Shown: piece by piece, positions 8,476 through 32,614 of the stretch
Layout of the letters: each line of letters starts with the position of its first letter
Numbering within the stretch: the stretch's first letter is position 1
Origin: Phallusia mammillata
Taxonomy: Eukaryota
Direction: 5' to 3'
DNA length: 64,000 bases
Assembly: GCA_965637545.1 (NCBI GenBank)
Contig: OZ281497.1
Span: 24,118,001-24,182,000 of the forward strand
Notes under the pieces: generated by a model
Seen by the model: only the letters and a program-made list of their open reading frames with translations
Databases searched by the model: none
What the model was told of the DNA's origin: nothing
Made by a program: the position numbers and the translations under genes

Positions 8476-10003
8476 TTAAAAACTCTTTCTTGGTATGGGG
8501 GCGGGTGGGCGATCATATTGGCAAATTTCATAAGGATTAGGTCTTGTTTCGTGGCTAGTTTTCATTGGAATTTCATACACCGACTCTTCAACTGCATTCG
8601 GCTTGGTCTGATTTCTATCTGTGGCTTTGTTTGGTTGTTTGTTGGACCTGCCAATGCAAAAAAAACTCTTTGAGAATTTTTTTTGAAACTGAAAACTGAA
8701 TATTCTTTACAAAACATTGTATGAGCTGCATCTCATGACTGCGAAATCGTATCGGGTTCTGAAAAGTCGATATGGAAACGTTGGTTAAACAGCAACGGTG
8801 CAATTGTTTATTTAAAGTAAAACTTCAGGCCAGGGCTTTATATTCACCATAAAGTATATTCAAAATGAATCAACGCATTTTGCAGGCAATTCCCCACCAA
8901 AATAATAAAAATAAAAACAACAACACAATAGTTCGTTGTAGATTTTGGTTGAAGTTTGCTAGTTTACCTTTTCCTGTCCCAGTAAAACACAGCAATAAGG
9001 ACAACAAGAACCAGAAAGAAAAATCCTGCCACGGCGCTTGGAACTGCAACTGTTACCAATCGGTATTCATTTGCTAAAACCAAGTGTGGTAATGTTAGCT
9101 AGTAATAGATAATCATTAAATGTGCCATGTGTGAACGTCTTAAACTTACAGCATTTAATACAGTGCCGTTGGTATTATTTTTTATAAACCTGTAGGATTT
9201 TAAAGTAGACTATAGGATATTTTAGGCGTGCTACCAACATCAATCCTGCTATTGTTTCAGTCGAAATTTTTCCTCCATAAAAAGATTCATTCAAAGAGTG
9301 ACGTTGACTGATAAATAGCAGTCGAAGTTAGCTGTAAACAATGCACCATAATACTAACAATATGGCTACAGCAAGTTGATTATTGCTTTCATCACGTAAA
9401 TAAATGAATTGAATTGAATTGAATTGAATTTGTACTCAAATTGTTTAAACGATTACTGTTACCTACTTGCTTTGCTGGTAGTTGGATTGTTATGAGTTGA
9501 AACGAATCTTGTTTCCATTATTTGGTTTGTAGCTTCTGTGGTTTCTATAGAATAACAAGCAAAGTCGATCTTTACAGGTACACAAAAACTGAGTGCCTAA
9601 AATAGTGATTGTTTATAAAAAAATGTCTTTTTTAAACGGTTTTGTATTGAAAACTAACAAAATCTATATCAGAAAAATATACACGAAGCAAACATTGGAT
9701 ATTTTTCGCAAAAACTTGTTTAAATTTTTTGCTATAAAAAACATTGCTATAAAATCCACGCACATCATTATTTAATTGTGGTAGTTTCATTGTTGTTTTG
9801 CTATTACGTCAAGCAATATGAATGTCAAACTAAATAAAACATTTCTGTTTACCATAAAAGTCGTCGTTGTTGTCTCCGGGTTCATCATCAAACCCGTTGT
9901 TTTCAAACCCTGACCCAGAATAACCATATCCTAGCCCAGAGTAATAAACAGCCACAGATGTGGAAATATGCGAAATTAAAACAACACAAATAGCCAACTT
10001 CAT
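8476..10003 (-). CDS. small single-pass membrane protein (Ser-Gly/acidic ectodomain, mucin stalk, Tyr-motif tail), copy 1, ~168 aa
   Basis: Exons 9853-10003 (MKLAICVVLISHISTSVA-VYYSGLGYGYSGSGFENNGFDDEPGDNNDDFY), 9467-9544, 8968-9073 (TM VAVPSAVAGFFFLVLVVLIAVFYW) and 8476-8647 (EESVYEIP..YDRPPAPIP). All are GT-AG and the frame is open. Confidence 0.8.
9405..9430 (+). repeat. (TGAAT)n microsatellite
   Basis: Five tandem TGAAT units. Confidence 0.9.
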
Positions 10004-11488
10004 TTCGTGTTCAGTACGCAATATGCAAAAACCACTTTCTGAAGAAAAATAGTTCCAAAAAAGGTTATGAAACACTAAGCAGGAGCCCCAAAACGCGCTT
10101 CAAAACTATAACTGATATATAGTTAGTTTCCTTTTTAAGGTTTAATCTATCGTTTAATTCAATCAAAACCTTTAAAACGGTGTAGCTGCGGCGCGTTTAG
10201 GAATTATCCCCAATTCTGTCCTTAACTATTTTTTGCACACCATAAGATTTAAACTTTGCGCAGCTGTTTCTAGGTGATGGTTAAGTGCAATTTTGTAGCT
10301 ATGTGTTCTTTCACCAAGCGAACTATAAGGCTATGAACAATATGTTTTGTTTTTCTATGCTTGAAGCTTACAAAAAATGTTTATACGTTTCATAACGTTA
10401 AACTTTCCATATTAACTGTGTGAAAATTGCTTTTTCCGGCTATACTGAAAGCGACAACTTCTAACTATATTATCCATGCAACAATATTTGCCAGTTTTCA
10501 TCAGCTAATAAGGCTGCATGGTTTGTGCGCTCACAGTTTTTACCGAAACCATTCCTATGACTCAAGTCAATTCATGTAGTTTCGAAACTTGACAGGTTAA
10601 TTGTTCATTATACACTGTGTATGATTTTTGTCTGTTTTTAAAGGAAGTCTCAAACTACTTTTAGTACATCCTACCAATCACATAAATATTTTAATATCAC
10701 GGTAAAACTGCCAGGAAAACGGTCAATTTTGTCTACAAGTTTATTATTTATTGCAAATTTTAAAATTAGGCGCACGTGTAAAAATTGCAAGGTCATGTAA
10801 GTTGCAGAAGAATATATCAATGACATTTAGCGTTTGTAAAATGTGGCTGTGGTTTATAATTCCCACACAGCCTCTTCTGTTAATGGAAATAAAAATACTC
10901 ATTGTTGAACCCTAGTATTGTTTCTTTTTTTTACACTACATAAAAAACAAATATAACAAAAACAAAAATGAAACATTTATCATACACAAAGTAAAGCTTT
11001 AACCCCTTTTTGTTTAAATATAAAAACAAACTTACATATATCGATAGTTTTCAATAGAAATTTGTCGTACGCAAGGGCAGCGGAACAAAGCATTCACCCA
11101 TGCAAAAAACAAACAATTGGATAAGGCTAAAACGTTGGAAAGCGCAATTCAATAATCGTACACAGTTTATGAATCAAAGAGAAAATACATCTATAGTAAT
11201 CATTGCGTTACATTAAGACCCTTTGAAGTGTAAAGGCCCATAAAAGCCAAAAACTGAGGAATATTACCATTTAAAAAACAAGCTATAGGCAACTAATAGA
11301 AGACTCCATTGTGACTTTAGTTGAAAAATATTGCTGCTCTTTGTCACATGATTTCATTTTTTTGACAAATTTAGAGTTCACAAGTAGGCTAGTTTCGACT
11401 GCAATTAATATACACCACCGACACTGGATGCAACTTTTGGAAGAGGAAAAGCAGGTCGGTCAAAAGGATAAGTTTGTTCAGTATCAGG

Positions 11489-14400
11489 TCAATTGTGGTA
11501 GCGTTTTTTCTCAATCACCGGAACTTCGTAAATTGGTTCTTCAGTTTCGGCTGAAGCTGCAGTTCTTGCGTTGTTTACTGGCCATTGGTTTCTCCTGTAA
11601 CGTTCCCTGTTGGCACCGCAAATTAAAAAAATAACTGTAACCTTGAATGAACCCAAACTTTAAAAGTGCATGAACTACATTTGTTTGCATTACACATATG
11701 TCATAAAATGAAAGAAGGTGGTTAAACAAATATCGGTCATGGTTATTCAATATATTCTACAAATCATTGTTTTTGACCCTTTGCCAACCTTTTTCAATAA
11801 GTCACTGCTTCTAATATCCTGGTTTTTAGCATAATTGATTATGCTAACGCTAATCATTTTAGCATCCTAGCACCCCTTACATTGGTTCCTCGGCAAATTG
11901 TGGGATGGCGTGAACTTGAGGCGTTAAGTTGAAGACTGGTACCGGGTCTGTGCTATTGGGTGCTCTATTCGCCCTGCAATGCGAAACATGTGTGAAAAGA
12001 ATGTTGTTAAACACAATAGAACTCACCCTCATTGTTTGCATAAGTTACATTATAAATTGTTTCGGTTGCAATGCAATTTCACAAACCCTAAATGAGAGTT
12101 TCTAACTTTTGTCTATACGCCTTTAAACCAACGATGACAACATCGACTGCAAAGGCGCGTAAAAATTCTATCATTGGTTACTGAGTTAGGGACATGAAAA
12201 GTTACAAAATGTGACAAAAAACTCCCTTTCGGCCAAAAATCACGTTTTGTAGCGGGCGATAGAGAAGTCCAATTGGGCTCTAAATGTGCACATGCGTTAA
12301 AGTTGATTATATCAGTTATCCTAATCTTGCTGTGCGTACGGTCAGCAGTTCTTATTCCTTAAACGTGCAAATGTTCGGAGCACCCGATAGCAGCAGGTAC
12401 ATTTCTGGTTTAAGCAAAGTTCTTCAGAACATCTGGCCTAGTTTAACTATTAACGTAATCACCCAACTGTTTTCGTTGTTGGTTACCAATCCTTTTAACA
12501 AAGTTTGCTTTTTTACCTTCTTCTCTTCCGGCAAAGCACAACGATTACGATCACAAGAACAATGAGAAGGATTCCTCCCACGGAACATGAGATTGCAATT
12601 ATCAACGTCTGGTCATCTATTAAAGTTGAAACGTTTTACAATTGATAAATTGTGATTACAATTGAAATTTAAGCAAAAAGACATAATATGTATTAAGCAG
12701 GACAATGCCATTTCAATACCAAAGACAAGCCGCAGAAACATAACACGCAAATTTAAAAACTTTTGTATTGTTAGTATTTTTTACTGCTTACTAGTTTGAG
12801 GAGCCTTTACAGTGGTCTCTGGAACATAAGAAAATAAATGTTATTTTAGAGCAGGCAACCGCAGTCGGCAACCGCAGATCCGCGGCCCACTGCGACGAGT
12901 TCGTTACCATGCTGTATAATTTTTCGGGTTAAATGCTTTAAAACATTTTGCCCATATATCACAGGATAATAAACTAATAAAATTTCACTTTCAAAAGCGG
13001 TCCGCAGAGCAAAAAAGGTTGCCACACCTTGTTTTAGAAAAACCGCGTTTACACGTTTTTAAAATACAAACCAAATATAATATTGCTCGTTTCATTGGAC
13101 TGCGTCTAATCCAGTGGTTCTTAACCGGTGGGAAATTTAATGTTTTCAGAGGGAAATTATGTAAGTCAGGTAACCAAACTTTTGGCCCAAGGGTCGAACC
13201 CGGCTTTGAATTAGTCGTTGAAAGTTACTTTCCTAAAATTTTTCCGCAACAACATGTTAGATTAATTCTTAACCTAGTTTTACAAGACGCCTAAAAATAC
13301 AAGGCCGTTTGTTACATCACATACATGTCTGATAGTATCAATGACTGTGCTATTGTGCCCAAATAAAGGCCTTTCCTTTGTTGATTGTGATGCAATAAAT
13401 GACTATTGCAAGCAGAGGAAACTCTATAATATTCCATAAGCTTTATTCTCTCATAGAAACACTATTTAAACTGAATAAGATTGTAGTATATAACTTTGGG
13501 GTTCCAGACCAAATTGCTTCACCAAATTATTTCATTTAAAGAATATTTTTTTTGTTAACGGCACAAAACATCATTATAAAAATAACAAAGGGAAAAATTC
13601 AAACTTGGTGATTGACTTTAGTGGGAAACCACACCAAAGAGGTTAAGAACCACTGGGATAGACCTTGATACTGAAAGTGTTTTTTTTTTCACAACTGTTT
13701 TTATAAATTTTCAGTTTACCACGTGTTTCAAATACAAACCAAATATGATATTGCTCGGAATATAGCAAACGACTTTTTGTTTTTTAAACAAAATTGTATG
13801 AAATGTTTTTTTAGTATGAATCCGTAATTACCTTTAGAGTCCGTGGTTGTCCCTGGAGTAGTAAATGTGTTTGGACGAATATTTCAAAAACATAGAGGAA
13901 AAACAATGATTGATATTCAATGATGTTTTTGCAACAACACTTATGGAATTATGTGAGACAGTTAACACATTGAAAGCCATTTCGTAGCAAGACACAGTTT
14001 TTTTTAAGTTTTTTTTTAAGGTTTCGATTTTCAAATACGGTTTTGTCAATGTCAATCTTAACCCATGTAAAAACAAACGATATAAGCAAGAAAAGGAAAA
14101 AAAAAACGTTATGCAAATCTGTTTTACCTTTAAGAGTTCTTTGGCAGATATATCTAGCACTTGATGGACATAACGATGCGCTTATCTCCAAATAACTAGT
14201 GGGAGATGATTTCGAAATTTTGCTGCAATAGTTATTCCCAGTTCGAACATAAAACTCTTTTTCTGTAAGCACAAGTTTGTGGGTTTGAACAATACGATAT
14301 GCACCAAAGTTGTAACAGTTAATAAACCTGTGTATCAGACAAACCCAGCCCACATCCGTTTTCTACAAAACATGAACTCATAGCTTTAATGTAAACAAAA

Positions 14401-15176
14401 TAATAATAATAACTCGGTTGGTTTAGAGTTGGATGAGGGTGGAACTTATGGACCACAACTTGAAGGCGCAAGCCTGAAACCCGTGTAGTTTTGCAAAACC
14501 CAAACCATATCCAATTTGGCGGACACAACCTGTTCAACCACAATCAAAAAAGTAATTGTGGCAGAGTATGAGTTCAGACCCGGTAATTGAGAAACATTAA
14601 GCCGAAAATTAAACCACAGGTTCGAATTCTGCAACTCCCAGAACATCTAAAACCGTTTTTTAGTTGACCCACATTATTTTTCACCACTATTTGAGGCTGG
14701 CACAAAATTTGACAAACATAATTTTTTTAATAAATGTTTGTTAGCCCGCATCAAAAATAACCTAATTTATGAAAACGAAACCGGAATTTATGAGAACAAA
14801 AAATTAGCTAAATTAGCTGAATAGGATTTGCGTTTACAAACTGGTAACAGTTTAAACTTTGAAAAATCTCATAGCTGCATAATTGCATTAATTTCACCAA
14901 ACCGGAACCAGTAAATAAAGGTTACTTACTGGAAGAAAAAAAAAGAAATGTTGATGACTTTGGAAGAAACCCTTGAAGAGAGTAAAGAAGGCGATTTGAT
15001 TGTACACTCGCTATCTTTGCATTTAGCTTTGAGCATTCTTTCTCAGCTTGATTATACGAATAGACTTTGTCGGACCCAATATAATACTCGTTTCCATCAA
15101 ATGAATGCCAAGTTTGGGCGGAACATGAATGCCAAATTCCAACCACGAAAAGCATTAGGTGTATATTGTTTGCCAT
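11489..15176 (-). CDS. C-type-lectin-like type I membrane protein, copy B (truncated tail, possibly decaying)
   Basis: Exons 14930-15176, 14128-14262, 12792-12818, 12517-12616 (TM), 11881-11973 and a last exon from ~11615. The canonical last-exon acceptor is CAG>CGG (an in-frame cryptic AACAG lies 9 nt inside). There is a premature TGA at 11489-11491 after EEPIYEVP. Confidence 0.7.
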
Positions 15177-17118: not shown

Positions 17119-18345
17119 CTAACGACAAAAACAATGAAGCTTTACGTGGTATCAACTATCAATGAGTATAAAACTTAAATTATCTTTTATAAAAAAATTC
17201 TCTTTTATAAAAACCTGTGGGAATTTGTAACCATGAGCGATGACTTTCAAATGATTTAATACTGCGTTAACCAATTTTACAATGCGTGAGCCAAAGAACT
17301 TTTTTATAGAGAAAACACCATGCAGACGCGTCAGTAATCATTGAAGCAGGCTGTCCATCGAGCTATAGAACACGGTATATAAAGCACTTAAACGGTAAAA
17401 AAAACGATCAATGCCAGGTGTGCTAAGTGATGTCAGACGAAATTGGCGATTAGAAATGTTGCGTTGACAAACGATAAGAACCGGAGATGTTTGTCAGCTA
17501 TATGACAGATGTAAGGGCATGGAAACTGTGTCAATGTTAAGCTTGGGGTCGTGCTTGTTAATAGAAAGCGATTCGACAAACAACAGTCTGATGCAGTCTT
17601 GGCTAAAGGGACTCGTATGCAAAATGTGTATGTTGGCCATTTACTTGGTTTTGGTCTCCCTAAATGAATATTAATGATTATCATTAAAACTTAAGGGAAA
17701 ACTGTTTAAGTTTGGAGTGAATAAACAGATTTTGCATTTTGTAGTTGTATTTTAAGTCCTAAGAAACAGTGACACAACCGGTAAGATATGTATGAAATGT
17801 ATGTTAAAGGTCAACAAACGCTTATGTACGACAAGGTGAAGTAATAATGTTTGTTTCATTTTGTTGCGACCATGAGGTTCACGAATTAAATCCCGTCGTA
17901 ACTGCTTTGTCAAACTTAAAAATTTGTTGTTCACCTTTCAAGCAAATAAACTTTAGGTTAAGACTGTGACTGAAACAGACAGAAACCTAGAAATACAAAC
18001 TGAGCCACAGCAAAGTCTAAACCAAAAGATTGCGGACACGTGTTAAGAAGCACACCACCGCCACTAGTCGGCAGACAATTGTTTATCCATCACCAACCTA
18101 ACAAAAATGTGCAGTTAATCAGAAGAAATAAACACAAAACGACGACATGGTCAGGAAATCCACAACGTTTGATATTTTTTCTAAACAAGATAAACAGGCA
18201 GCTTTACAGTCTATGTAGCTCGATAGAGCGCGAGTCCCGGAAAGGCTCCTGTCGTGGGTTCGAATCTGACTGCAGGCTAGATTTTTCTACTCTACGCCTT
18301 GCCGCAAGGGAATGCTTGGAAGATAGGCTTGTATAGGTTCAACCC

Positions 18346-20030
18346 TGTAGCGACCCCTGTCGCTTATGTATTTCTTACGAAGCGTTACGTTTGCCTTTTT
18401 CCTATTGTGCGTGTGTTTTGCCTTTTTCGTGTGGGGCGCACGTTTGCTATGCGTTTGGTTTGACGCGTCATTCTATTATTTGCGATTGAAATAAACGGAC
18501 GCTACATTTGGTGACCCCTAATCCAGAAACGACTTTTCTGGAGTTCATTAAATAAGCATGTCAACCGACGGAGACACCGAGCATGCTGTTGCGATCAAAC
18601 TTCCGAATTTCTGGTCAGCAGAACCACGTGTTTGGTTCCAACAAATTGAGGCACAATTAGCATTAAAAAACAAAGTTGCAGACAAAACAAAGTTTTATTA
18701 TATAGTGTCCGCACTTGATGAAGATACAGCAAAGCGTATAATCGATTTATTGGAAGATCCTCCAGCAGAAAAAAGTTCGCATCAATTAAACAAAGACTGC
18801 TGGATTCTTTTGATTTATCAAATCAAGAAAGAACAGCACGCCTGCTGAACATGGCACCTCTAGGTGATAGAAAACCTTCTGAACTTATGGACGAATGCTA
18901 GCCCTACTGGGAAAACACCAGTCTTGCTTTCTATTCCAACATTTGTTTTTACAACATCTGCCGGAAGATGTTATTGTCCTCGTTTAAAAAGATTTGGAAA
19001 ACCCTCGCGACTTGGCAAAACAGACGGATAGGTTATGGCTTGTTCGGACGAGCAACACAGACTACACCATTGCCAAATTAAGAAAGCAGAGGCAAGCTAA
19101 ATCTTCAACACTTTTCAACAGCAACGACAGTAGTCAGTATTGTTTTTACCACCGGCGTTTTAAACGCCATGTGCTGCACAACAGGGAAACGCCAAGGCCG
19201 GTTGTCCACAATGAATGGGACAACCGGCAATCACACAACTTATTTTTCGTGTGGGATCGAACCTCTGGTTGCAACCAGTGGACACTGGTGCTGAAATCAG
19301 TGTCTTTCCGCCTTCTGGCTATGAAAGGAGAATGAACCACAAGGGACAAAATCTCACAGCAGCTAACGGCAGCAATATAACAACCTACGCTTCCTAGTTA
19401 ATTTCTCTTGATATTCCTTCCGGCAAGTTTGAATGGAAGTTTGTGCTCGCCGACGTATCTAGGCCACTACTTGGAGCAGATTTCCTTCGAGCGCACGGTT
19501 TACTTGTTGATGTTAAACGGCAATGTCTGGTACATGCTCAGTCGTTAACTAGCATGACCATAGGCAAGACAAATCAAGCGGCACCTCGCCTAAACGCAAT
19601 TAGCAACGCACAATCAAGTTATGTCAAACTTTTGGCAAAGTTTCCGGACATAACAACGCCACATTTTTCTGCAGTAATGCCAAAACATTGTGTGGAACAT
19701 CACATTCCCACCAGCGGCCTACCAGTGCACTTTCGGGCAAGACGACTTCCACCCGAAAAACTAGTCATTGCAAAGGCAAAATTTAGTAAAATGATGGAGC
19801 TGGGAATAGTCCGCCGTTCATCCAGTCTATGGTCGTCTCCACTTCATATGGTTCCCAAAACATCAGGTGGATGGCGCCCCTGTGGCGATTACAGGCGCCT
19901 TAATGCAGCAACACAACCAGACCTTTACTCGATCCCACATATCCAGGATTTTACAGCAAAACTGGCAGGGGCTAAGATTTTTTCTAAATCGATCTGGTTC
20001 GAGGATATCACCAGGTACCCGTTACGCCAG
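18346..20030 (+). mobile_element. 3'-truncated, decayed Ty3/Gypsy LTR retrotransposon
   Basis: 5' LTR 18346-18506 (TGTAGCG..CGCTACA) and PBS TGGTGACCC. Frameshifted gag from 18558 (KLPNFW..WFQQIEAQ), protease VDTGAEISV, and RT start [21 protein letters not shown], then an abrupt end. Confidence 0.9.
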
Positions 20031-20263
20031 CATAGGACTGGTAATTAGCATTGCATATGGTTTATTATTGTAAAAGTAGTTGTGTGTAAGGTAACTACAG
20101 TGGATTAGAGTGTACTAGTTGATATATGGATAATTTAAATGTGTGTGATTATCTGACCATGCTAGTCGTGTATACTTTTTATACTTTTTCTCGTGTTAGT
20201 AGCGTAACTAAACTCTGTATTTTGTATTTCTATTTGAATAAGACACTAAGCAATGTAAATCTG

Positions 20264-20521
20264 TGTGGGAACTGCTAACGAGTAATCTGCTCTGTTGTAG
20301 ACTGTTTTGCTCTGTTGTAGACTGTTCTGTTCTGTTGTGACTGTCTTGATTGATTCTTGTCTTGTTTGTCCTGACTATCTGCTCTGTCTTGACTAATCTG
20401 TACTGTTATGAACTGTCCAGTTTCGTTGTACTGTGGTACTCGGTATTGGAATACAGCCTTCGTTTTATTGTTGCAACGTATCAGTGTGACAGACAGCATT
20501 TGGCGGTACAAGTAACCCACA
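20264..20521. mobile_element. possible solo LTR or repeat fragment
   Basis: TGTGGG..CCCACA inverted termini and internal CTGT-rich short repeats; no TSD seen. Confidence 0.35.
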
Positions 20522-20995: not shown

Positions 20996-23900
20996 TTAAC
21001 ATGGACCGCCGACGCTGGATGGAACTTTTGGAAGGGGAAAAGCAGGTCGGTCAAATGGACAAGTATGTTCAGTATCAGGTACATTGTGGTAGGGCTTTTT
21101 CTCAAACACCGGAACTTCGTAAATTGGTTCTTCAGTTTCGGCTGGAGCTGCAGCTCTTACGTTGTTTACAGGCCATGGGTTTCTCCTATAACGTTCCGTG
21201 TTGGTGCTGCAAATTAAAAAAAAATTATGATTGTAACCGTGAATAAACCCTAAACATAAAACTACATTAGTCGGTTTTCGTTGTTGTCGGTTTTCAGCCA
21301 ACTGTGTTCGTTGTTGGTTACACTCCCTTTTAGCAAAGTTTGCTTTTTACCTTCTTCTCTTTCGGCAAAGCACAACAATTACGATCACAAGAACAATGAA
21401 ATGGAATCCTCCCAACGAACATGAGATTGCAATTGGCAACGTCTGGTCATCTAGTAAAGTTGAAACGTTAGTGTTAATTGATAAATTTAAGCATAAAGGC
21501 ACGATCTGTATAGAGCAGTACAATGTCATGTCAATACCAATGACAAGCCGCAGAAACATAACATGTAAATTTAAAACCTTTCTGTAGCGTTTACAATTAG
21601 TAATATATGATCTCTATGTTAACAGTATATCACGTGACCGTATTGACCATGCCGTTTCATTCTATGAGCACGAGCAATAGCGAAAGCATATAAACAAACA
21701 CTTTGTGTTATGTCTAGTCTCTGACAAAGCACTAGGCAGCGGAACACTATAACTGGCGACGAGGATAATTAACAGTAATCAAGGATTGACGAAGATATTT
21801 TAAAGTCACCTTAAAACTCGCAAAAATCTTTAAAAGTTGGGGAGAAAGACAGACGAAAAAGCAGAACAAAAACAAAATGGCTGCTATACTGTCAGATAGT
21901 TTACCTCCATTTGACGTTACCGATCATTCAACAGCTGGTACACGTTGAACAAAATGGGTGAAACGCCTTGAAAACTTATTTGTGGTAAAAGACATCACAA
22001 GTGACAAGATTAAACGTGCTTGTTTGCTACATTATGCAGGAGCAGAAGTATTTGACATTTTTGAAACATTACCAGATAATGGCAATGAAGAAAGAAAGGA
22101 AGGAAAATTAATGCTTCCATATAATCCAAATGCATTCACAGTCACACACATCAAAGGCACAATGATCACGGCACAAAACAAATACAAAACAGTAACCAGA
22201 AATTCATCATTCTTTAAGAAAATAAACAGATCATCACAACATGATGTACATACAGATGATGATCACCCGTACTTTACATATGACCATGATAACACAACAC
22301 CTTGTGAAGAACAAAATGCAAATGATATTGTAGAAAATGACCCTGTTCGTCGTTACCCTACAAGAAATCGTAGACCCCCTCAACATCTGAGAGATGGTAC
22401 TTACATTTAAGTGTTAGTGTGAATATTTGATTTGCTTGTATATTGCATTTCTTTACCTATAGTGCTATTCTTCACAACGTACTTCAAACATCCTTTTTAA
22501 AAGAAGCCAATGTATGAGTGTCAAACAAACTGTGTTATCTTGCCAAATTGTATCCGAATACCTATTTGTATTTTCATATAGCAGTAAGTGTCATTGTACT
22601 GTGTCATTTCTAAACAAACTACCATTGTGTATTGTGTTAAATAACTTTGTGATTTAGCATCTATAACTTAGGGAGGAATGTAGTGTTTACAATTAGTAAT
22701 ATACGATCTCTATGTTAACAGTATATCACGTGACCGTATTGACCATGCCGTTTCATTCTATGAGCACGAGCAATAGCGAAAGCATATCAACAAACACTTT
22801 GTGTTATGTCTAGTCTCTGACAAAGCACTAGGCAGCGGAACACTATACTTTCTGCATTTTTTAATACTTTTTCACTATACGTACTGGTTTGATTAGCCCT
22901 TGCAGTGGTCTCTTGAACATCAGATAAATATACGCTATTTTGGCAGAACCACTTTTTGCAATAACTTGTCTGGTTTACCAATCATTTTGCTAAATTAGTT
23001 TTTAAAAAGTTTGTGCTATGTTTCATTGAATTGACCTGGGTGTTAAAAGTGTTTTTACAACTTTTTTTAATTAGTTTACAACGTTTTTTTTTCAAATCCA
23101 AACCTATGATATTGCTCGGAATATAGAAAACTTGTTTTTTTACACAATTGTATAAAATGTTTTTCTAATATGAATCCGTCATTACCTTTAGAGCCATTGG
23201 TTGTCGACCCTGGAGTAGTAAATGTATATAATCGAATACCTTAAAAACATAGAGGAAAAACACTACAAGTTATTTTTTGTTTTTTGAACAAAATTTTACA
23301 AAATGTTTTTCTAATATGAATCCGTAATTACCTTTAGAGCACTTGGTTGTCCCGGGAGTAGTAAATGTATTTAAATGAAAACCTGAAAAACATAGGGGAA
23401 AAACACTACATTTTTTGTTTTTTAAACAAAATTGTAAGAAATGTTTTGATTTTTTGAAACATGATTCCGTACTTACGTCTGGAGGTTGTGGTTGTTTCTG
23501 GAATAATAAATGTGTTTTGAACAATATCTTTAAAAAATAATAGAAAAAAAAAAGTTTATCCAATGATTTCTTTAATTTTTATTTCTTTGCTTTTTTTATT
23601 TTTTTGCGACAAGACTTTGAATCGTTGACGCATGGAATTAAATGAGATAGTTAATACATCTAAATCGGTTTCATAGCAAGACATGCGTTTTTTTATATAA
23701 AAACAAAGGTGAAAATCAAACAAAAAGTTGAGCAAATCGTTTTTACCTTTAGGGATTCTTTGGCAGATATAACTAGCAGTTGATGAACAAGTGGCTTCTT
23801 CCCAATGCCAACCGATACTTAACCAGGAACTCGTTATCTTGCTGCAATAGTAACCCTCAGTATGAACAAAATACTCTGGAAGCACAAAGTATGTAGATTG

Positions 23901-25389
23901 CAGCAATCCGCAATATGCAACATATTTCTAACGGGTAACAAATCTGAGAATCAGCTAAACCCAAAAATACAGATCCAAAATACAATTGTTTTAAACAAAA
24001 AACGAATTTGGCCTTAAAGCTTAAGCTAACAAAATAAAACCATTGCGAAATGGGCACACAGTTGTAGTTTTACTTATCTCAAGTTAGGTCGAAGTTCACA
24101 AGTTGTTCACGAAAATCATACCACCTGAGCGTATGCATATTTATCCAACAGAAAATAAAAACGTAAGTGTGGTAAAGTGGGAATTTAGGGAATTAAAGGA
24201 ACCTAGGCCTCTACTTTTAAAAATGTCGAACAATGGCCTGGTACAGGGGTCGGCAACCTTTTTTGCACTGCGGACCGTTTTTGAAAGTAAAATTTTATCG
24301 GGGATCGGTCTTCTCCGGTATACATGCTGAAATCGTTTCTTAGCATTTAACCCGAAAAATGATACCGCCCGGTAACGAACTCCTGGCGGCCCGGTACCGG
24401 GCCACGGACCGCGGGCGGTTGCCGACCACTGGCCTGAAAAACTCCGGTCCGACTTCTACAACTCCCTCCAGTATATTTAAAAACGAATTAAATTTACAAC
24501 CTTATCGAACTTTGCACATTATTTTCAAAGCAGAATAAGCTGACTGGGTTTTACCATTATACCAGCTGTCGATAGTTTCAACTATTTTGCGCTAGATTAA
24601 TTCATTGGGTTACAAATCACATTAGGCCGCTCTGACTAAAACAGTGGTTCTCAATTTTTTCCGGATCGCGTACCACCTGACAACATTTTCTATCGCTGCG
24701 TACCACCTAAAGTCCTTTCAAACGACTGCCCAGAACGGAGTTTTTGCCCGAACCAGGTCTGGTCAGATGGGTCAGTTGAGTTGCAATTTTAGATCGGACT
24801 TAAATTAGGAATCACAGAGATCTACTCGCGTACCACCTGAAAAGTTCAGGCGTACCACTAATGGTACGCGTACCACAGTTTGAGAACCACTGGACTAAAA
24901 GAATATTTCACACTCCAAAGGCGTCAAAAGATTTTCAGTAAGTCCGCGATCGCTTTACGAAATAATATTTTCAGATCCAATTTTCACTTGTTTATTTCAC
25001 GCTTTCACTACGCATGTGATGGGTAAACGCTAAACTAGTCTAGAGTAGTTCGCCAAGTCCGTTACCAAAAAGCTTTTTTCACAGAAAACAAAAGTAAGCT
25101 GCAGAACTGCACGCTAGGCTATAATACTATTCGATAACTTACCATAATACCATTCCGACCAAGTATAGCCTGAAAGAATGCTGTTGAGAAATGTAAGAAG
25201 GCGAGATGAAGGTTTCACATTCGCTAGTCTCGCATTTAGCTTTGAGCATGCTTTCTCAGCTTGACCATACGAACTGACTTTGTTGGATCCAATATAATAC
25301 TCGTTTCCATTAAAAGAATGCCAAGTTCGGGCGGAACATGAATGCGAAATTGCAAACACGAAAAGCGTTAGGTGTATATTGTTTGCCAT
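20996..25389 (-). CDS. C-type-lectin-like type I membrane protein, copy C, 279 aa, open frame
   Basis: Exons 25143-25389, 23747-23875 (YFVHTEGYYC..WHWEEATCSSTASYICQR), stalk mini-exons 23477-23497, 23332-23382, 23186-23239 and 22885-22911, TM 21351-21450, last exon 20996-21206 (EEPIYEVP). The exons sum to 840 nt. Confidence 0.85.
21583..22847 (+). mobile_element. internally deleted (TRIM-like) Gypsy LTR element, in an intron of CTL copy C
   Basis: 169-bp LTRs at 21583-21751 and 22679-22847 (3 mismatches), 5-bp TSD CTTTC, PBS TGGCGACGAG and PPT AGGGAGGAA. The interior is a gag N-terminus fused to a pol C-terminus (ORF 21958-22410). Confidence 0.92.
24244..24431. mobile_element. hAT-type MITE
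   Basis: TIRs CAGGGGTCGGCAACC / GGTTGCCGACCACTG and an imperfect 8-bp TSD gcctggta/gcctgaaa. Confidence 0.8.
24642..24892. mobile_element. hAT-type MITE
   Basis: TIRs CAGTGGTTCTCAA / TTGAGAACCACTG, a perfect TSD GACTAAAA and GCGTACCAC subterminal repeats. Same family as 59268-59585. Confidence 0.92.
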
Positions 25390-26490: not shown

Positions 26491-26536
26491 TGCACTGATA
26501 AGACCGTACAGGTCGAAACAGTGGTCACTGTCTACA
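26491..26536 (+). ncRNA. type I hammerhead ribozyme motif (unit C), G8>A core variant
   Basis: TGCA CTGATAA GACC gtaca GGTC GAA ACAGTG gt CACTGT C TACA. Stems II and III pair perfectly and the cleavage triplet is GUC. Confidence 0.6.
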
Positions 26537-26804
26537 AACAACTTGTTGTTGTACTTGGCTGTTGCTTTTATTCTACATTGATTGTTTCCAAATATTAGCC
26601 ACGTAACACGATGGCTAGTTCATCTTTTTACAATCATATATTGTGTCCAGCAAGAAAATAAATAACAAAATCTCCAAAAAACAATTTACTCGTCTATTGC
26701 AGTACGTGTTTGTAGGAATAATACATTTTGAACTTTTTTTGAAGATATTCATGTCTCAAAAATACTCAAGCAAAACACTTCTGCCAAAGTTTTCTATTAT
26801 GCAA

Positions 26805-27548: not shown

Positions 27549-29539
27549 CTAGATAAAATCCACTCAGTGTTAGAATAATTTATTGTTTCTCAACTTTGTT
27601 AGGTTTCAAACTGTTTTTGGCTTTTATTAATAATTTGTGGATTCGATAAAAATATGAGCTTAATTGAACATTATTCAGTTGAAATCTACTTTTTGTTTGG
27701 TGCTTCAAGAAATTTGGTTTCAATGTTTTGATCATTATTATTGTTATGATGTAAGTCAAAGTATACGAAATAACCAAAGGAGTTGAAAGAATTGATCACG
27801 TCCAAAACGCAATTCCTTAATCTCCAATCCCAAAGATAATACATCCTATATGTGCAGATGTGTGAAATCGAAAGCACAAAATCTGTCAACTTTAGTTTTT
27901 ATCCAATAACTTACTTCAAAGATAAAACCTGATAGTTACGCAATGTACAACAAAGTTGTAATTGAAAACAGAAAACTACACTGAACATTTTCGTCAACAA
28001 GATTGTCAACCGTGCGTCTGCGGACTCAAAAATCCATGAAATTATTTCGTAACACAGTCTACTAATTATTCATTTAAAACCAACAATAAAAGATGCGCTT
28101 TCAAAGAATAGCAAATCTGTATTTTAGTGTTTTTTTATACTTAATCCTGTAGTGAACCGGTTTATATCCTACAACCCCCCAAAATCGGTGTAGTTTCCGG
28201 CTTGGTGATTTTTTTTCTCGACAAGTGAAATAAACTCAACTCAACTCAAATACACGTGGTTAGTTCAAATAATTTTGCATTTTTAGTTAAAAATTTGGTA
28301 AAAATCTATAGGCTACAAAGGTTGCAAAAAATATTCTTGGTTTCACTATTCTCGATGCTTGGTTACAATAAGCTGATGTGGAAGTTTCGTTTACATCATG
28401 TAGATCTTTTCTTGTCAATTTGAGAAAATTTCTACCAAAAATAGCATCTCAGTGGCAGCTTTGTTTTTCATTGTTCCAAAATAATTGCTAGTTTCCATGA
28501 CTCTACTGTTCATAAATCAAAAATGTTTTGAAACTGTTTCTTGTATTGTGTATAAGAGTCTATTCAAATGGTTTGAAATCGTGAACGGTCAACTACCCGT
28601 CAGTCACTGTGTGTATGACTTTTGCTTGTTTTTTTAAGCAATTGTCACAATATAATTTAAGTCGTCTAGTCTGTTGTAAGTGATATACTGAACGTAGTAC
28701 ATTTTGATTTAAAATATTCGCATTTAGTTGTTTGAGGGTTTTTGGTACTTATATGCGCAATAACTTTGTGAAAAAAATTCTTCCCACCTAATTCCCTTAC
28801 TTCAATAAAGACATGTTTAAATAGGTTTGATGCTTATAATATTGTGATTTTTTGTCCTTGCCACCTTTATATCAGTTGTTTTATATAAGGTGGTCGGTTT
28901 GATCCTAAATGGTAACTTAGGACAGACTTATGAGAAGATCGTTTATCGAATTAAGTAAATGTTTGACTGGAAATTAAAAAATGGTTTAATCCTTGACTCA
29001 CCCACGGACAAAACCTTGATCTGAATTCTTTAAAGTCTGTATTCAAACTAATAAAAAAAATTTTTTAAAAGTATTATTTGTCTTAGATTTTTTATTCACA
29101 GGTTTGAAAAGCTGCAATTAATACAACAATACATTCATTAACTGTTATTTATAACAACAATAAAACGATAGGGAATGTGCAAACACTATAACAGTTTCAA
29201 AGGTCAAGTGGCCCAGTCACAAAGAATATCTTCCTTGTTGTCACAGGGTTTTGGGTTCTAATACAATTTCTGTCATTCATGTTTCCCTACGCAAAAGCTT
29301 ACGACGCTCCTACAAAGCAAAGAAACTTGAGGCATAAACTGCATTATTCCCCCTAACTCGAAACAATACATAAAAAAACATTAATGCTATATAAAAAAAT
29401 ATATGTAAAAACGATCCAACGGAAAAGCTACGGACTCATTGTGAACATAACGATTCAAGCGTTGCATGCCCAACGAAGACAAAAATAAATAAACAAACAA
29501 ACATAATGTTCAGAAATCTTATAGTAGAATTTAAAACCT

Positions 29540-32500
29540 CTATATTGGTATTGGGGCTGGTGGACGGTCATATTGGCAACTTTCATTAGGATTAGGTCTT
29601 GTTTCGTGGCTAATTTTCATTGGAATTTCATACACTGACTCTTCAACTGCATTCGGCTTGTTCTGATTTATATCTGCGACTTTGTTTAGTTGTTTGTTGG
29701 ACCTGCCAATGCAAAAAAACTGCTTGAGATTGTTTTAAAAATGAAAACTGAATATTGTGTACAAAACATTGTGTGAGCTGCATCTCATAACTGCGAATTG
29801 GTATCAGGTTTTGAAATGTCGATATGGAAACGTTGGTTAAACAGCAACGGTGTAATTGTATATTTAATCTAAATTCTACACCAGGGCTTTATATCCAATA
29901 TAGAGTATATTTAAAATAAATCAATGCATTTTGCAGGCAATTCCCCACCAAAATAAAAACAACAACAAAATAGTTCGTTGTAGATTTTGGTTGAAGTTTT
30001 CTATTTTACCTTTTCCTGTCCCAGTAAAACACAACAATCAGGAAAACAAGAACCAGAAAGAAAAATCCTGCCACGGCGCTTGGAACTGCAACTGCTACCA
30101 ATCGGTATTCATTTGCTAAAACCAAGTGTTGTAATGTTAGCTGGAATTGTTAATCATTAAGTAGATGTGCCCTATGTGGAGACCGTCTTATGCCACAGGG
30201 ACTATATGCAATGTTATTGGTATTATTTTTTAGAGACATGCAGGATTTTAAAGTAGACTATACTATAGTTTAGGCGTGCTACCAAATTCAGTCATGCTAT
30301 TGTTTCAATAGAAAATTTGCCACCATAAACAAATTCCCGTGCTACCAACGTCAATCATGCTATTGTTTCAATCGAAAGTTTGCCTCTATTCAAAGATTCC
30401 AATTAAAGAATGAAGTTGACTAATAAATAGCACTCGAAGCTTGCTGTAAACAATGCACCATAAGATCAACAAACTGGAACACCATAGCCCGGCTACAAAG
30501 CCCACATGGTTAAAGTCTTGTCACTATCTGCATTTATGAGACCGTTTATATGCTACAGCAGGTTAGCCTACATGAGTGTAACTTAATTCTTTGTTATTGT
30601 TATTGCTTTGTACTCACATTGTTTAAATGATTACTGTTACTTACTTGCTTTGGTGGGAGTTGGATTGTTATGAGTTGAAATGGTTCCTGTTTTCTTTGTT
30701 TTCGTGCCTTGCGTAAAACAAAGTCAAGCGCCAATCTTATGTAGCAGCACAAAATCAATGGGTGTAAAATAGTGATTATTTACATTTAAAACTATAACCA
30801 GTATAAATTGAGTTTGGGTCTCTAACTTCTTGACTCTTACATCTCAGGGTGTTATCAGTAAAACAATGACCTACATAAACTTAAAAAGCTATTTTTTAAT
30901 TTTAAATGCTTCTGCAAACGCCTGTTTTATTATCACTAACTAATTAAAAAGTTTAAATTGATTTTGTCATTGTTTTTGGTCATCGATTTTCCTCGCAAAC
31001 TTTTTAATGGTCATTTATAAACATTTTTGTGTTTAAAACTAAGGTATGTGCTTAGTGCACGAATAATTCCTACAATCTACTTTCTTTAGCCGGGAGAGGA
31101 TTGTTAACAGTTGAAACGAATCCTGTTTCCATTATTTGGTCTGTGCCTTCTATGGTTTCTGAAATAACAAACAATGTCGATATTTATAGGCACACAAAAA
31201 CTAAATGCTTAAAATAGTGATTATTATTCATTTTTAATAACAATACAGTTCAGGTTGATGTTTGTGTCTGAATTTCTTGACAATTACGAGTCCAAATTTG
31301 TTCACAAGCCTTTGTACTAAATCAGGGCTTCCCAAACTGGGGGTCGCGACCCCGGAAGGGGTCGCTTAACAAACTTGAGGGGTCGCAGAGAGCTGTGCCA
31401 ATTTCTGCAAAAAGTAATCAATACACTGGCGCGGAGTACGGGGGTGTGAGGGTGCCGCACACCCCCGGCCTTTATCTTTGTATAACGTCAAAATCGCATC
31501 TTTGTTCAAGTTACGTCGGTTTTAAAACGTTTTCAGCCAAGCGCAAACGCGCTTGTACTGACGCTATTGATCGAACAGACGTCGGTTGAAACGCAACAAT
31601 TGCAATTGTTTTAAAATACCCAGGCATTTTAATGCAGCATAAACATGATATATAGAGTTACAAACGTTTAAGCATTGTTTGGCGCAATAACTTTCTCTGA
31701 TAAAAAATATGCAATAAATTTCCGATTTTCAAGCAGTGTTAAATATCTGTTTTCAAAGCACTGCAACGGCCTAAACTTGGTTCAAGGTGAGCTCAGTTTA
31801 GGCGTCAACAATACACGATTTGAAACTTGTATTGCTTTTACTTTATTTTCCGCCCTAACAAATTACTTAAAACCTAAGTCGTTGTAAAACTTGCCGACTC
31901 GGTAAATCGTCCTTTACGAACGTGCGTATGTTCTCGACGCACAGCAAACGTTCAAACCACACGAAGAAATTGTGACAAGTGCCCATTTGCAAAACAATCT
32001 GTCAGAAACTAAGGCTAAAGCACGTAAAAGTTATCGGTGTTTGAACGTGTAAAGTAGTAGACTCCGAGTACCGGTAGGTTGTTTTTAGTTTTCGCTCGAA
32101 TTCGGCGTTTCAATAAATACAACAAACGTTTTTTTCGCATTGTTTATCATACCGTGAAGGGTCGCGAAAAATTTAAAGAGATTAAAAGGGGTCGCGAACA
32201 AAAAAGTTTGGGAAGCCCTGTACTAAATAATGTCCCAGATTTTACCAACTTTTGAAAGTATTTTTTTAAACGGTTATTTAAAACTAACAAAATCTACACT
32301 AGAAAAGCATACAAGAAACAAACATCAGATAAAGTTTTTAAAACCTTGTTTAATGTTGTTTTTTTGCCAAAAACCGTTGCTATAAAATCCATTTACATCA
32401 TCATTTATCTGCGATAGTTTCATTGTTATTATTGCTATTACGTCAAGCAATATGAATGTCAAACTAAATAAAAATATTTCTTTTTACCGTAAAAGTAATC

Positions 32501-32614
32501 GTTGTCTCCGGATTCATCACTAAACTCGTCATTTCCAGACCCTACCCCAGAGTAATAAACGGCCACAGATGTGGAGATATGCAAAATTAAAACAACACAA
32601 ATGGCCAACTTCAT
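29540..32614 (-). CDS. small single-pass membrane protein (Ser-Gly/acidic ectodomain, mucin stalk, Tyr-motif tail), copy 2
   Basis: Exons 32488-32614 (MKLAICVVLILHISTSVA-VYYSGVGSGNDEFSDESGDNDYFY), 31081-31158, 30645-30707, 30010-30115 (TM) and 29540-29702 (EESVYEIP..YDRPPAPIPI*). The frame is open. Confidence 0.8.
31323..32220. mobile_element. non-autonomous hAT element
   Basis: 16-bp TIRs CAGGGCTTCCCAAACT, a perfect 8-bp TSD TACTAAAT and GGGGTCGC subterminal motifs. Confidence 0.92.

What the first reader, a model, noticed from the sequence alone, without database searches (positions are those of the whole stretch)
8476..32614. Lectin-less partner gene sharing the same signalling tail: a paired receptor/adaptor system
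Seen: two intact genes (8476-10003, 29540-32614) lie downstream of CTL copies B and D. They have the same exon-phase plan (phase-1 stalk exons, phase 1>2 TM exon, phase-2 last exon) and a homologous tail (EESVYEIP..YDRPPAPIP vs EEPIYEVP..FDRPAFPLP). In place of the CTLD they have a short Tyr/Gly/Asp-rich peptide with SGSG or SGVGSG..ESGD. Known: Ser-Gly near acidic residues is the glycosaminoglycan attachment signature, and Tyr among acidic residues is a sulfation signature. Inference: exon shuffling produced a proteoglycan/sulfopeptide-type sibling that may act as co-receptor, ligand or decoy for the CTL receptors.
Basis: partly seen in the sequence, partly recalled or inferred. Interest (0 to 1): 0.78.

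Follow-up and report, generated by a model that had tools for sequence, protein, structure and literature searches.

The report
Lectin-less sibling genes sharing receptor tail
A sea-squirt gene cluster repeats a two-gene unit, a lectin-like receptor followed by a small acidic, tyrosine-rich membrane protein with a related tail; the genes look real, but whether the two proteins work together is untested.

Summary

- **Family size.** They belong to a family of nine copies. Seven are intact. All lie in one roughly 110-kb array on the same strand.
- **Pairing.** Each copy starts 1.3-1.6 kb (3.1 kb for the second) downstream of a gene with the lectin-type tail. Seven of those are compact C-type-lectin-like receptor genes; the two lowest are lectin-less hybrids.
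- **Tail homology is real but old.** Identity is 28% and collinear. Profile-profile E is 2.5e-6, and 0 of 20,000 shuffles reached the observed score. Genome-wide, each tail class finds only the other.
- **Shared motifs.** An acidic [IV]-Y-E-[IV]-P site and a [YF]DRPxxP[IL]P motif are conserved in both classes.
- **Outer part.** It has no Cys and no basic residue, carries 5-7 acidic residues and 4-6 Tyr, and sits on a Thr/Ser/Pro stalk.
- **Constraint is modest.** dN/dS is 0.45-0.85.

I found no RNA evidence, no relatives outside this genome, and no match to a known family. The proteoglycan, sulfopeptide, co-receptor, ligand and decoy roles remain untested. No adaptor-type features (charged membrane residue, ITAM) are present.

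The parts
9853..10003 (-). P1 exon 1: ATG, 19-residue signal peptide, then a 31-residue Gly/Tyr/acidic peptide (7 D/E, 0 K/R, 5 Tyr, no Cys); ends in phase 1
9467..9544 (-). P1 stalk exon (phase 1>1), Thr/Ser/Pro-rich (10 of 25 residues)
8968..9073 (-). P1 membrane exon (phase 1>2, 106 nt); the helix has no charged residue and carries an S-xxx-G motif
8476..8647 (-). P1 tail exon with stop (56 residues): EESVYEIP and YDRPPAPIP motifs
10039..10048 (-). Acceptor-like ttttcttcAG 35 nt upstream of the P1 ATG; similar in all copies printed; candidate trans-splice or 5'-UTR acceptor (inference)
   Evidence: spliced-leader 16-mer count
32488..32614 (-). P2 exon 1: signal peptide and a 23-residue acidic Tyr peptide (SGVGSG, DESGD)
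31081..31158 (-). P2 stalk exon 2 (phase 1>1)
30645..30707 (-). P2 stalk exon 3 (phase 1>1); present in the 5-exon subtype only
30010..30115 (-). P2 membrane exon (phase 1>2)
29540..29702 (-). P2 tail exon with stop (53 residues)
35697..38294 (-). CTL D, the lectin-like receptor upstream of P2: exons 38294-38039, 37697-37563, 37404-37354, 36882-36783 (membrane) and 35898-35697 (tail); 247 aa
   Evidence: Lectin_C E = 3.5e-4 on exon 1, 21.7 bits, just under the 22.6-bit cut-off
20996..25389 (-). CTL C, a lectin-like receptor with no partner behind it: 7 exons, 270 aa; membrane exon 21450-21351, tail 21206-20996
11414..15176 (-). CTL B, upstream of P1; probably disabled: tail-exon acceptor reads GG (11617-11616) and there is an in-frame TGA at 11491-11489
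1..3865 (-). CTL A: exon 1 at 3865-3653, second lectin exon at 2937-2812; the tail runs off the window start (75 and below); its partner Pm1 lies just outside the window
   Evidence: (Lectin_C E = 1.5e-4, 22.9 bits, over the cut-off)
32668..34425 (.). tRNA-Ser-headed repeat inserted between CTL D and P2; it accounts for the longer 3.1-kb spacing of this pair

Best explanation
The two loci are intact members of a nine-copy family, apparently restricted to this lineage, of small type I membrane proteins.

**Anatomy of each protein**
- A signal peptide.
- A 23-31-residue N-terminal peptide with no Cys and no basic residue, rich in Gly, Tyr, Asp and Glu.
- A Thr/Ser/Pro stalk made of one or two symmetric phase-1 exons.
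- One membrane helix.
- A 53-56-residue tail.

**Origin and arrangement (shown)**
- The family is an old paralogue of the neighbouring compact C-type-lectin-like receptors in its membrane and tail exons.
- It has a different first exon in place of the lectin exons.
- Receptor and sibling together form the two-gene unit that was amplified in tandem.

**How it most likely works (inferred)**
- Both proteins present the same invariant acidic [IV]-Y-E-[IV]-P site. After tyrosine phosphorylation this would be a pYxxP docking site of the Crk/Nck/Abl SH2 type.
- Both also present an adjacent RPxxP[IL]P proline motif, so both would feed one cytoplasmic pathway.
- The sibling would bring that module to the surface under an anionic, probably O-glycosylated and possibly Tyr-sulfated or glycosaminoglycan-bearing mucin-like peptide instead of a lectin domain.
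- The tails are not identical. The lectin tail has YEVP plus YHN[GV] (Grb2-type), whereas the sibling has YEIP plus YDRP.

A physical or ligand relation with the lectin receptors is possible but unproven.
For: **Gene models.** They are intact, with conserved ATG and GT-AG sites, in all nine copies. Seven have open frames.

**Location.** The family is confined to C4:24.044-24.151 Mb on one strand. Each copy starts 1.3-1.6 kb (once 3.1 kb) behind a gene with the lectin-type tail.

**Tail homology.** hhalign E = 2.5e-6, BLASTP E = 7e-7, and 0 of 20,000 shuffles reached the score. The two tail classes are each other's only cross-hits genome-wide. The phases and junction position match.

**Conserved motifs.** E21, Y24, E25, P27, D45, P47 and P52 are invariant across both classes.

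**Outer-part composition**.

**Modest purifying selection.**
- dN/dS is 0.45-0.85.
- By exon, dN/dS is 0.44 in exon 1 and 0.58 in the tail.
- dN is 0.07-0.16, against a last-intron divergence of 0.10-0.22 (0.02 in the closest pair).

**Known parallels.** pYxxP is the Crk SH2 consensus, conserved from before the animals and in Ciona (PMC5043372). An acidic sulfo-Tyr peptide directly N-terminal of a mucin stalk is the layout of PSGL-1 and GPIb-alpha, which are counter-receptors of the C-type lectin P-selectin (PMC2195629).
Against: - No transcript evidence. Three runs guessed to be RNA cover only repeats in the stretch 8300-14299. They cover no exon of P1 or of CTL B, so they say nothing either way.
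- Selection is weak. dN/dS is about 1 in the stalk and membrane exons and 1.08 for the closest pair.
- Two of nine copies are broken. The three best-conserved copies are near-identical recent duplicates.
- No relative was found outside this genome. The profile search of 1.84 billion representatives gave one chance bacterial hit and not even a self hit, so the library lacks this species.
- Phosphorylation, SH2 or SH3 binding, glycosylation and sulfation all rest on motif reading only.
Confidence: 0.6

Rival explanations
1. The sibling is a proteoglycan or sulfopeptide that binds, or is bound by, the adjacent lectin-like receptors. It would act as a dedicated co-receptor, ligand or decoy, so the cassette would be a genetically linked receptor and counter-structure pair.
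For: - A partner follows nine of the eleven genes that carry the lectin-type tail.
- The partner N-peptide has 5-7 acidic and no basic residues. The lectin domain of CTL D is net basic, with 11 K/R against 6 D/E, and its second exon has 8 against 1.
- SG[VL]G is present in 8 of 9 copies, and an acidic Tyr cluster in all.
- The genome encodes a xylosyltransferase-type gene and Sulfotransfer_3 genes.
- Both membrane helices share an S-xxx-G motif that could mediate association.
- Vertebrate precedents are P-selectin with PSGL-1 or GPIb-alpha (PMC2195629) and CLEC-2 with podoplanin (PMC10949654).
Against: - Pairing on the chromosome follows from tandem duplication of a two-gene unit and needs no functional link.
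- Similarity groupings of partners and of the adjacent lectin-type tails agree only in part.
- CTL B, the gene paired with P1, is disabled, while P1 is intact.
- The strong glycosaminoglycan contexts (SGSG, DESGD) are each in only 2 of 9 copies.
- The lectin domain is compact. About a dozen residues lie where the long loop would be, and I saw none of its usual sugar-binding motifs.
- There are no binding or expression data.
Confidence: 0.2
2. One complex locus rather than two genes. The partner exons would be alternative 3' exons, and partner exon 1 an internal alternative first exon, of the upstream lectin gene. All the junctions are phase 1, so lectin exons could splice onto the partner's stalk, membrane exon and tail.
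For: - Same strand, with only 1.3-1.6 kb between the lectin-gene stop and the partner ATG.
- All stalk junctions are phase 1 in both genes.
- AATAAA or ATTAAA is absent within 600 nt of the stop in three lectin copies (m2-m4) and lies far from it in others.
Against: - Partner exon 1 has its own ATG and signal peptide in all nine copies.
- The lectin tail exon ends in a stop codon in every copy.
- The acceptor-like site 35 nt upstream of the partner ATG is in frame with that ATG in P1 but out of frame in P2, where a TGA lies 9 nt upstream. Reading through from lectin exons is therefore not conserved.
- No joints were seen, though no RNA was available either.
Confidence: 0.1
3. Non-functional by-products. 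The partners would be decaying partial duplicates carried along by the amplification of the lectin genes, intact only because the copies are young.
For: - dN/dS is about 1 in the stalk and membrane exons and 1.08 between P1 and Pm2.
- Pm5 and Pm7 are broken, and the hybrids m6 and m7 have lost their ATG.
- No RNA support and no relatives elsewhere.
Against: - The tails of the two gene classes are only 28% identical, while copies within each class are at least 75% identical. The partner lineage is therefore much older than the array expansion, yet it kept an open frame, all its splice sites, its signal peptide and its motifs.
- dN/dS is below 1 for the deeper pairs. For P1-P2, 19.5 of 102 synonymous sites differ against 33.5 of 360 non-synonymous sites, which by my hand chi-square is p about 0.01.
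- Exon 1 and the tail are the constrained parts.
Confidence: 0.1

Closest known systems
PSGL-1 and GPIb-alpha (sialomucin counter-receptors of the C-type lectin P-selectin)
   Same: Type I membrane protein with an anionic Tyr cluster free of basic residues directly N-terminal of a Thr/Ser/Pro stalk, then a membrane helix and a short tail. PMC2195629 describes this layout and its role in binding a C-type lectin.
   Different: There is no sequence relation: Pfam and the Atlas gave nothing. The protein here is much smaller, at 168-178 aa. Its tail is homologous to that of the neighbouring lectin-like receptor, which is not the case for PSGL-1 and selectins. Sulfation and binding are untested.
Podoplanin and CLEC-2
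   Same: A small acidic mucin-type type I membrane protein that serves as the ligand of a C-type-lectin-like receptor carrying a tyrosine motif (PMC10949654).
   Different: No Podoplanin family match at E up to 10. To my knowledge those two genes are neither linked nor related in their tails.
Syndecans
   Same: Type I membrane protein with an outer part free of Cys, Ser-Gly dipeptides near acidic and aromatic residues, and a short tail containing Tyr.
   Different: The conserved syndecan cytoplasmic blocks (which I recall as RMKKKDEGSY and EFYA) are absent from the tail sequence. Neither the membrane exon nor the tail exon matches the Syndecan family. So it is not a syndecan.
Linked receptor-ligand gene clusters (NKR-P1/Clr in the rodent NK complex; s-Themis/v-Themis in Ciona), from my own knowledge
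   Same: Receptor genes and candidate counter-structure genes are interleaved and inherited together.
   Different: In those systems binding has been shown; here it has not. The partner here shares the tail rather than the outer part with the receptor.
Paired immune receptors with DAP12- or FcR-gamma-type adaptors
   Same: A multigene receptor array that includes small membrane proteins carrying Tyr motifs.
   Different: The logic is reversed: here the tail is shared and the outer parts differ. The membrane helix has no charged residue, the outer part has no Cys, and there is no YxxL/I-x6-8-YxxL/I.
Crk-binding YxxP sites (paxillin Y31/Y118, p130Cas substrate domain)
   Same: An acidic [IV]-Y-x-x-P context. 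Phospho-YxxP is the CRK/CRKL SH2 consensus and is ancient (PMC5043372; PMC2174549 by its title).
   Different: This is a short-motif resemblance only. No phosphorylation or binding was tested.

Membership tests
C-type lectin-like domain proteins (Pfam Lectin_C) | The partner genes contain a lectin domain | tested here: not met
   No partner exon matches Lectin_C at E up to 10, and the outer part has no Cys. In the neighbouring genes, exon 1 does match: CTL A at E = 1.5e-4 and 22.9 bits (cut-off 22.6), CTL D at E = 3.5e-4 and 21.7 bits.
The local lectin-receptor tail family (defined here) | Homologous last exon entered in phase 2, carrying EExxYExP and [YF]DRPxxPxP | tested here: met
   Genome-wide, each tail class finds only the other.
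Syndecan | Conserved membrane and cytoplasmic C1/V/C2 blocks (Pfam Syndecan) | tested here: not met
   No Syndecan match for the membrane or tail exons. No EFYA terminus.
Syndecan | Ser-Gly attachment sites that carry heparan or chondroitin sulfate | not testable with these tools
   SG[VL]G is present in 8 of 9 copies; SGSG and DESGD are each in 2 of 9. A xylosyltransferase-type gene exists in the genome.
PSGL-1/GPIb-alpha-type sulfated sialomucins | Acidic Tyr cluster next to a mucin stalk | tested here: met
   The N-peptide has 4-6 Tyr, 5-7 D/E and no K/R. The stalk exons are 28-50% Ser/Thr/Pro.
PSGL-1/GPIb-alpha-type sulfated sialomucins | Tyrosine O-sulfation and binding to a lectin domain | not testable with these tools
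   Only the sequence context is visible. A Sulfotransfer_3 gene covering the whole profile exists on C1, but I did not show that it is a tyrosylprotein sulfotransferase.
DAP12/FcR-gamma-type signalling adaptors | Charged residue in the membrane helix, Cys in a very short outer part, and an ITAM | tested here: not met
   Read from the sequence. The helix LVTVAVPSAVAGFFFLVLVVLIAVFYW has no charge, the outer part has no Cys, and the Tyr motifs are YEIP and YDRP.
ITIM-bearing inhibitory receptors | [SIVL]xYxx[IVL] | tested here: not met
   SVYEIP has Pro at +3. No other Tyr in either tail class fits the pattern.
Expressed protein-coding gene | Spliced transcripts | tested here: inconclusive
   X1 is a DNA run. 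X3, X6 and X8 are only guessed to be RNA and cover repeats alone, with no exon of P1 or CTL B.

The most novel reading that the evidence does not exclude
The array is a genetically linked receptor and counter-structure system. Each compact lectin-like domain would recognise the sulfated or glycosylated acidic Tyr peptide of a partner protein, in cis or between cells. Both sides would signal through the same pYxxP tail. Tandem diversification of the pairs would give a recognition code, for example for blood-cell self/non-self or gamete recognition in a sea squirt.
Probability: 0.08. Interest if true: 0.8.

Novelty: new variant of a known kind. Interest (0 to 1): 0.42.

Why it matters
If the genes are expressed, this is a clean natural example of module exchange at symmetric phase-1 introns. 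One signalling tail is placed under either a lectin-like domain or an anionic mucin-like peptide, and the two genes are amplified together.

It offers a small, tractable test case for two questions:
- How do invertebrate chordates build lineage-specific surface-receptor families?
- Did lectin and acidic-mucin counter-receptor pairs, as in the selectin/PSGL-1 and CLEC-2/podoplanin systems, arise independently?

As it stands, it is an orphan gene family with a suggestive layout and no functional data.

Tried and rejected
1. **RNA support.** I laid X1, X3, X6 and X8 on 8300-14299. X1 is DNA, and the other three cover only repeats at 10100-10499, 10900-11099 and 12700-13699. Nothing follows about expression.
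2. **Relatives elsewhere.**
   - A profile of both tail classes against 1.84 billion representatives gave one hit. It is a 1,096-aa bacterial repeat protein that I judge to be chance.
   - The library does not even return this genome's own proteins, so absence elsewhere is weak evidence.
   - I skipped the word search. Its length filter excludes full-length proteins for an exon query, and the exhaustive search had already found nothing.
3. **Known families.** Pfam on every partner exon gave nothing beyond generic membrane-segment matches below cut-off. The ESM Atlas gave nothing usable.
4. **Adaptor reading.** Rejected: no charged residue in the helix, no Cys in the outer part, and no ITAM or ITIM.
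5. **In-frame read-through from lectin exons into partner exon 1.** Rejected because the frame is not conserved between P1 and P2.
6. **Strict co-duplication of the pairs.** The similarity groupings agree only in part.
7. **Left out under the operators' rule.** I made no search or structure prediction with a joined (spliced) protein; all searches were exon by exon, by reference.

Full report
**Observation**

Both genes lie on the minus strand. A script that locates each exon by short anchors gives two models.

| Gene | Exons (window coordinates) | Length |
|---|---|---|
| P1 | 10003-9853, 9544-9467, 9073-8968, 8647-8476 | 168 aa |
| P2 | 32614-32488, 31158-31081, 30707-30645, 30115-30010, 29702-29540 | 178 aa |

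- Every intron is GT-AG.
- The phases are 0>1 (signal peptide plus N-peptide), 1>1 (stalk), 1>2 (membrane exon) and 2>end (tail).

I modelled the lectin genes in the same way (from the reads).
- CTL C has 7 exons and 270 aa. CTL D has 5 exons and 247 aa.
- Both follow the same plan. Their membrane exon is 100 nt, against 106 nt in the partners, and the last intron splits the basic stop-transfer residues at the same point.
- Exon 1 of CTL A matches Pfam Lectin_C at E = 1.5e-4 and 22.9 bits, over the 22.6-bit cut-off.
- Exon 1 of CTL D matches at E = 3.5e-4 and 21.7 bits, just under the cut-off.
- The domain has the four canonical Cys. Only about a dozen residues lie where the long loop would be, so it is a compact lectin-like domain. 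I saw none of the usual sugar-binding motifs.

The window is G000:C4:24118001-24182000. I ran six-frame searches of the whole 240-Mb genome.
- The P1 tail finds nine places.
- P1 exon 1 finds nine places.
- The CTL C tail finds eleven places.
- All lie on C4 between 24.044 and 24.154 Mb, and all are on the minus strand.

I fetched the 78 kb before the window and mapped every exon. Read along the minus strand, the order is:

D, P2, C, B, P1, A, Pm1, m1, m2, Pm2, m3, Pm3, m4, Pm4, m5, Pm5, m6, Pm6, m7, Pm7.

- A partner follows nine of the eleven genes that carry a lectin-type tail. The partner ATG lies 1,335-1,570 nt behind the stop, or 3,083 nt for D/P2.
- C and m1 have no partner. They share a distinct lectin-domain subtype, whose second lectin exon is about 40% identical to that of the other subtype.
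- The amplified unit is therefore a two-gene cassette.

**State of the nine partners**

| Copy | State |
|---|---|
| P1, P2, Pm1, Pm6 | Open frame |
| Pm2, Pm3, Pm4 | Open frame; identical proteins; recent 11.9-kb repeats |
| Pm5 | TAA in stalk exon 2, a phase 1>1 exon whose skipping would keep the frame; also an in-frame 22-residue duplication of the YEIP module in the tail |
| Pm7 | Frameshift in the tail |

- All nine keep the ATG and all their GT-AG sites.
- There are two subtypes. P1, Pm2-4 and Pm7 have four exons. P2, Pm1, Pm5 and Pm6 have five.

**Is the tail similarity real?**

- Genome-wide, the cross-class hits are weak, at E = 0.03-1.6. However, they are the only other hits either tail has, apart from one E = 0.6 hit on C8.
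- Within the 142-kb cluster, tblastn gives E of 1e-6 to 4e-5 in both directions.
- BLASTP of P1 against CTL C gives E = 7e-7, with 15 of 53 residues identical and one 2-residue gap.
- A profile of five partner tails (A1) against eight lectin-type tails (A2) gives hhalign probability 88.7% and E = 2.5e-6 over 40 columns.
- The Smith-Waterman score is 77, against 29 +/- 5.8 in 20,000 shuffles, and none reached it. The P2/D and P1/D pairs gave 0 and 2 of 20,000.
- The joint alignment (A3) is collinear over the whole tail. E21, Y24, E25, P27, D45, P47 and P52 are invariant across both classes.
- Taken with the identical exon position and phase, this is homology and not a shared short motif.
- Within each class the tails are at least 75% identical; between classes they are 23-29% identical. 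The split between lectin gene and partner is therefore much older than the array expansion.

**Module exchange**

The two lowest lectin-type tails, m6 and m7, have no lectin exons.
- Their 3' part, from the intron before the membrane exon onward, is 84-96% identical in DNA to CTL D.
- Their 5' part has no DNA similarity to D, C, P1 or P2. It encodes a partner-like exon 1 that is 36% identical to P1 and ends in an acidic ...FIY.
- It also encodes a partner-like stalk exon, DTTQI..NNEPPAQG.
- Both copies read ATA where the partners have ATG, and the m6 membrane exon is degenerate. I therefore take them for dead hybrids.
- They show that 5' partner-type and 3' lectin-type modules have been recombined in this cluster.

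**The outer part**

- After a 19-residue signal peptide ending ...TSVAV comes a peptide of 23-31 residues.
- That peptide has 5-7 Asp/Glu, no Lys/Arg, 4-6 Tyr, 3-7 Gly and no Cys.
- YYSG[VL]G at the N-terminus is present in 8 of 9 copies (YYTGLG in Pm6).
- The block DE[PS]GD[NI][ND] followed by 1-4 Tyr at the end of the exon is present in all nine.
- SGSG occurs only in P1 and Pm7. DESGD occurs only in P2 and Pm6, where the other copies read DEPGD.
- The acidic Tyr cluster is thus the conserved feature, and the Ser-Gly signature is uneven.
- The stalk exons are 28-50% Ser/Thr/Pro.

This layout, an anionic Tyr cluster directly N-terminal of a mucin stalk on a type I membrane protein, is what PMC2195629 describes for PSGL-1 and GPIb-alpha. 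Both are counter-receptors of the C-type lectin P-selectin.

- The genome has a xylosyltransferase-type gene and Sulfotransfer_3 genes, so the enzymes needed are plausible.
- The lectin domain of CTL D is net basic, with 11 K/R against 6 D/E.
- None of this tests sulfation, glycosaminoglycan attachment or binding.

**The tail**

- The invariant site is acidic [IV]-Y-E-[IV]-P.
- Phospho-YxxP is the CRK/CRKL SH2 consensus. It is conserved from choanoflagellates onward, and membrane proteins with cytoplasmic YxxP sites are known (PMC5043372).
- The partners have a second YxxP site (YDRP) where the lectin tails read FDRP.
- The lectin tails have YHN[GV], which I recognise as a Grb2-type YxN motif; the partners lack it.
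- Both classes keep RPxxP[IL]P.
- No ITIM or ITAM is present, and the membrane helix has no charged residue, so nothing resembles a DAP12-type adaptor.
- Both helices carry an S-xxx-G motif that could mediate helix association. This is inference.

**Selection**

Nei-Gojobori counts were summed exon by exon.
- dN/dS is 0.45-0.85 for nine of the ten pairs and 1.08 for the closest pair, P1/Pm2.
- By exon, it is 0.44 in exon 1, 0.58 in the tail and about 0.9-1.0 in the stalk and membrane exons.
- dN is 0.07-0.16, against a last-intron divergence of 0.10-0.22 (0.02 in the closest pair).
- For P1/P2, 19.5 of 102 synonymous sites differ against 33.5 of 360 non-synonymous sites. My hand chi-square puts that at p about 0.01.
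- The constraint is real but modest, as in many fast-evolving surface-receptor families.

**Independence of the gene**

- Thirty-five nucleotides upstream of the P1 ATG there is an acceptor-like ttttcttcAG (10048-10039). All seven copies printed have a similar site.
- The frame from it to the ATG is open in P1. In P2 it is shifted by one base, and a TGA lies 9 nt before the ATG. Splicing from lectin exons into exon 1 is therefore not conserved.
- A trans-splice or 5'-UTR acceptor is more likely.
- The 16-nt spliced leader that I recall from Ciona occurs 3,860 times in this genome, and its reversed control occurs 0 times. This also supports the sea-squirt origin given by earlier notes.
- Alternative use of the partner's 3' exons by the lectin gene cannot be excluded without RNA.

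**Expression and relatives**

- The run search found two DNA holders, plus small runs only guessed to be RNA.
- Laid on 8300-14299, those small runs cover only repeats. Nothing follows about expression.
- The profile search of 1.84 billion representatives gave one chance hit and no self hit.
- Pfam and the ESM Atlas gave nothing.
- Two full-text paper searches for sea-squirt lectin receptors found nothing on this family.
- Earlier notes of this scan describe other lectin-like receptor arrays with two-tyrosine tails on other contigs (s1-394843, s1-392393). The tails here have no match there.

**Verdict**

- The shared ancestry of the tail and the genomic pairing are solid.
- The 'adaptor' label fails its tests.
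- The proteoglycan/sulfopeptide and co-receptor/ligand/decoy readings remain open hypotheses, with a suggestive vertebrate analogy.
- This is an orphan family, apparently restricted to this lineage, and a variant of known kinds (receptor arrays that lose domains; acidic mucin-type membrane proteins). Its interest is moderate until transcripts and binding are shown.

Noticed in passing
window 11414-11617 (CTL B tail exon): CTL B looks disabled. The tail-exon acceptor reads GG instead of AG (11617-11616), and an in-frame TGA (11491-11489) cuts off the FDRPAFPLP half of the tail. Its downstream partner P1 is intact.
   Followed up: partly
L045:4972-7093 and L044:7696-9588 (C4:24054972-24057093 and C4:24047696-24049588): Two hybrid genes (m6, m7) join a diverged partner-like exon 1 (ATG changed to ATA) and a partner-like stalk exon to a lectin-type membrane exon and tail that are 84-96% identical to CTL D. 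They are probably dead, but they show that modules have been exchanged.
   Followed up: partly
L045:8045-8269 and L046 (Pm5, C4:24058045-24060284): The Pm5 tail carries an in-frame 22-residue tandem duplication of the SVYEIPMKTSNET.PNP.EIC module, giving two YEIP sites. Its stalk exon 2 has a TAA, but that exon is phase 1>1, so skipping it would keep the frame.
   Followed up: no
G000 genome-wide; window 20227-20242 (one near-match): The 16-nt Ciona-type spliced-leader sequence occurs 3,860 times dispersed over the genome, against 0 for the reversed control. That is far more than I would expect for a leader-RNA gene family, and it suggests a leader-carrying repeat.
   Followed up: no
window 10100-10499 and 12900-13699: Two stretches have 10- to 100-fold higher contig depth than their surroundings in the DNA run. 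They are the only parts of this stretch covered in the runs guessed to be RNA. They are high-copy repeats, one between the genes and one in an intron.
   Followed up: no
window 18300-20500 and 21600-22900: A retroelement fragment with a reverse-transcriptase-like open frame (19443-20048, + strand) separates CTL C from CTL B. Another insertion, flanked by direct repeats of about 150 nt (about 21600-21760 and 22730-22880), sits in the CTL C intron before the membrane exon.
   Followed up: no
window 23747-25389 and 37563-38294: The lectin-like domains are compact, at about 105-108 residues on two exons. They have four Cys, and only about a dozen residues lie where the long loop would be. The C/m1 subtype has a Trp-rich second exon that is only about 40% identical to the other subtype, while the tails stay 80-99% identical.
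   Followed up: partly
C4:24071254-24098227 (L047-L049): Three cassettes (m2/Pm2, m3/Pm3, m4/Pm4) are 99.8-100% identical repeats with a period of about 11.86 kb. They are either very recent duplications or an assembly effect.
   Followed up: no
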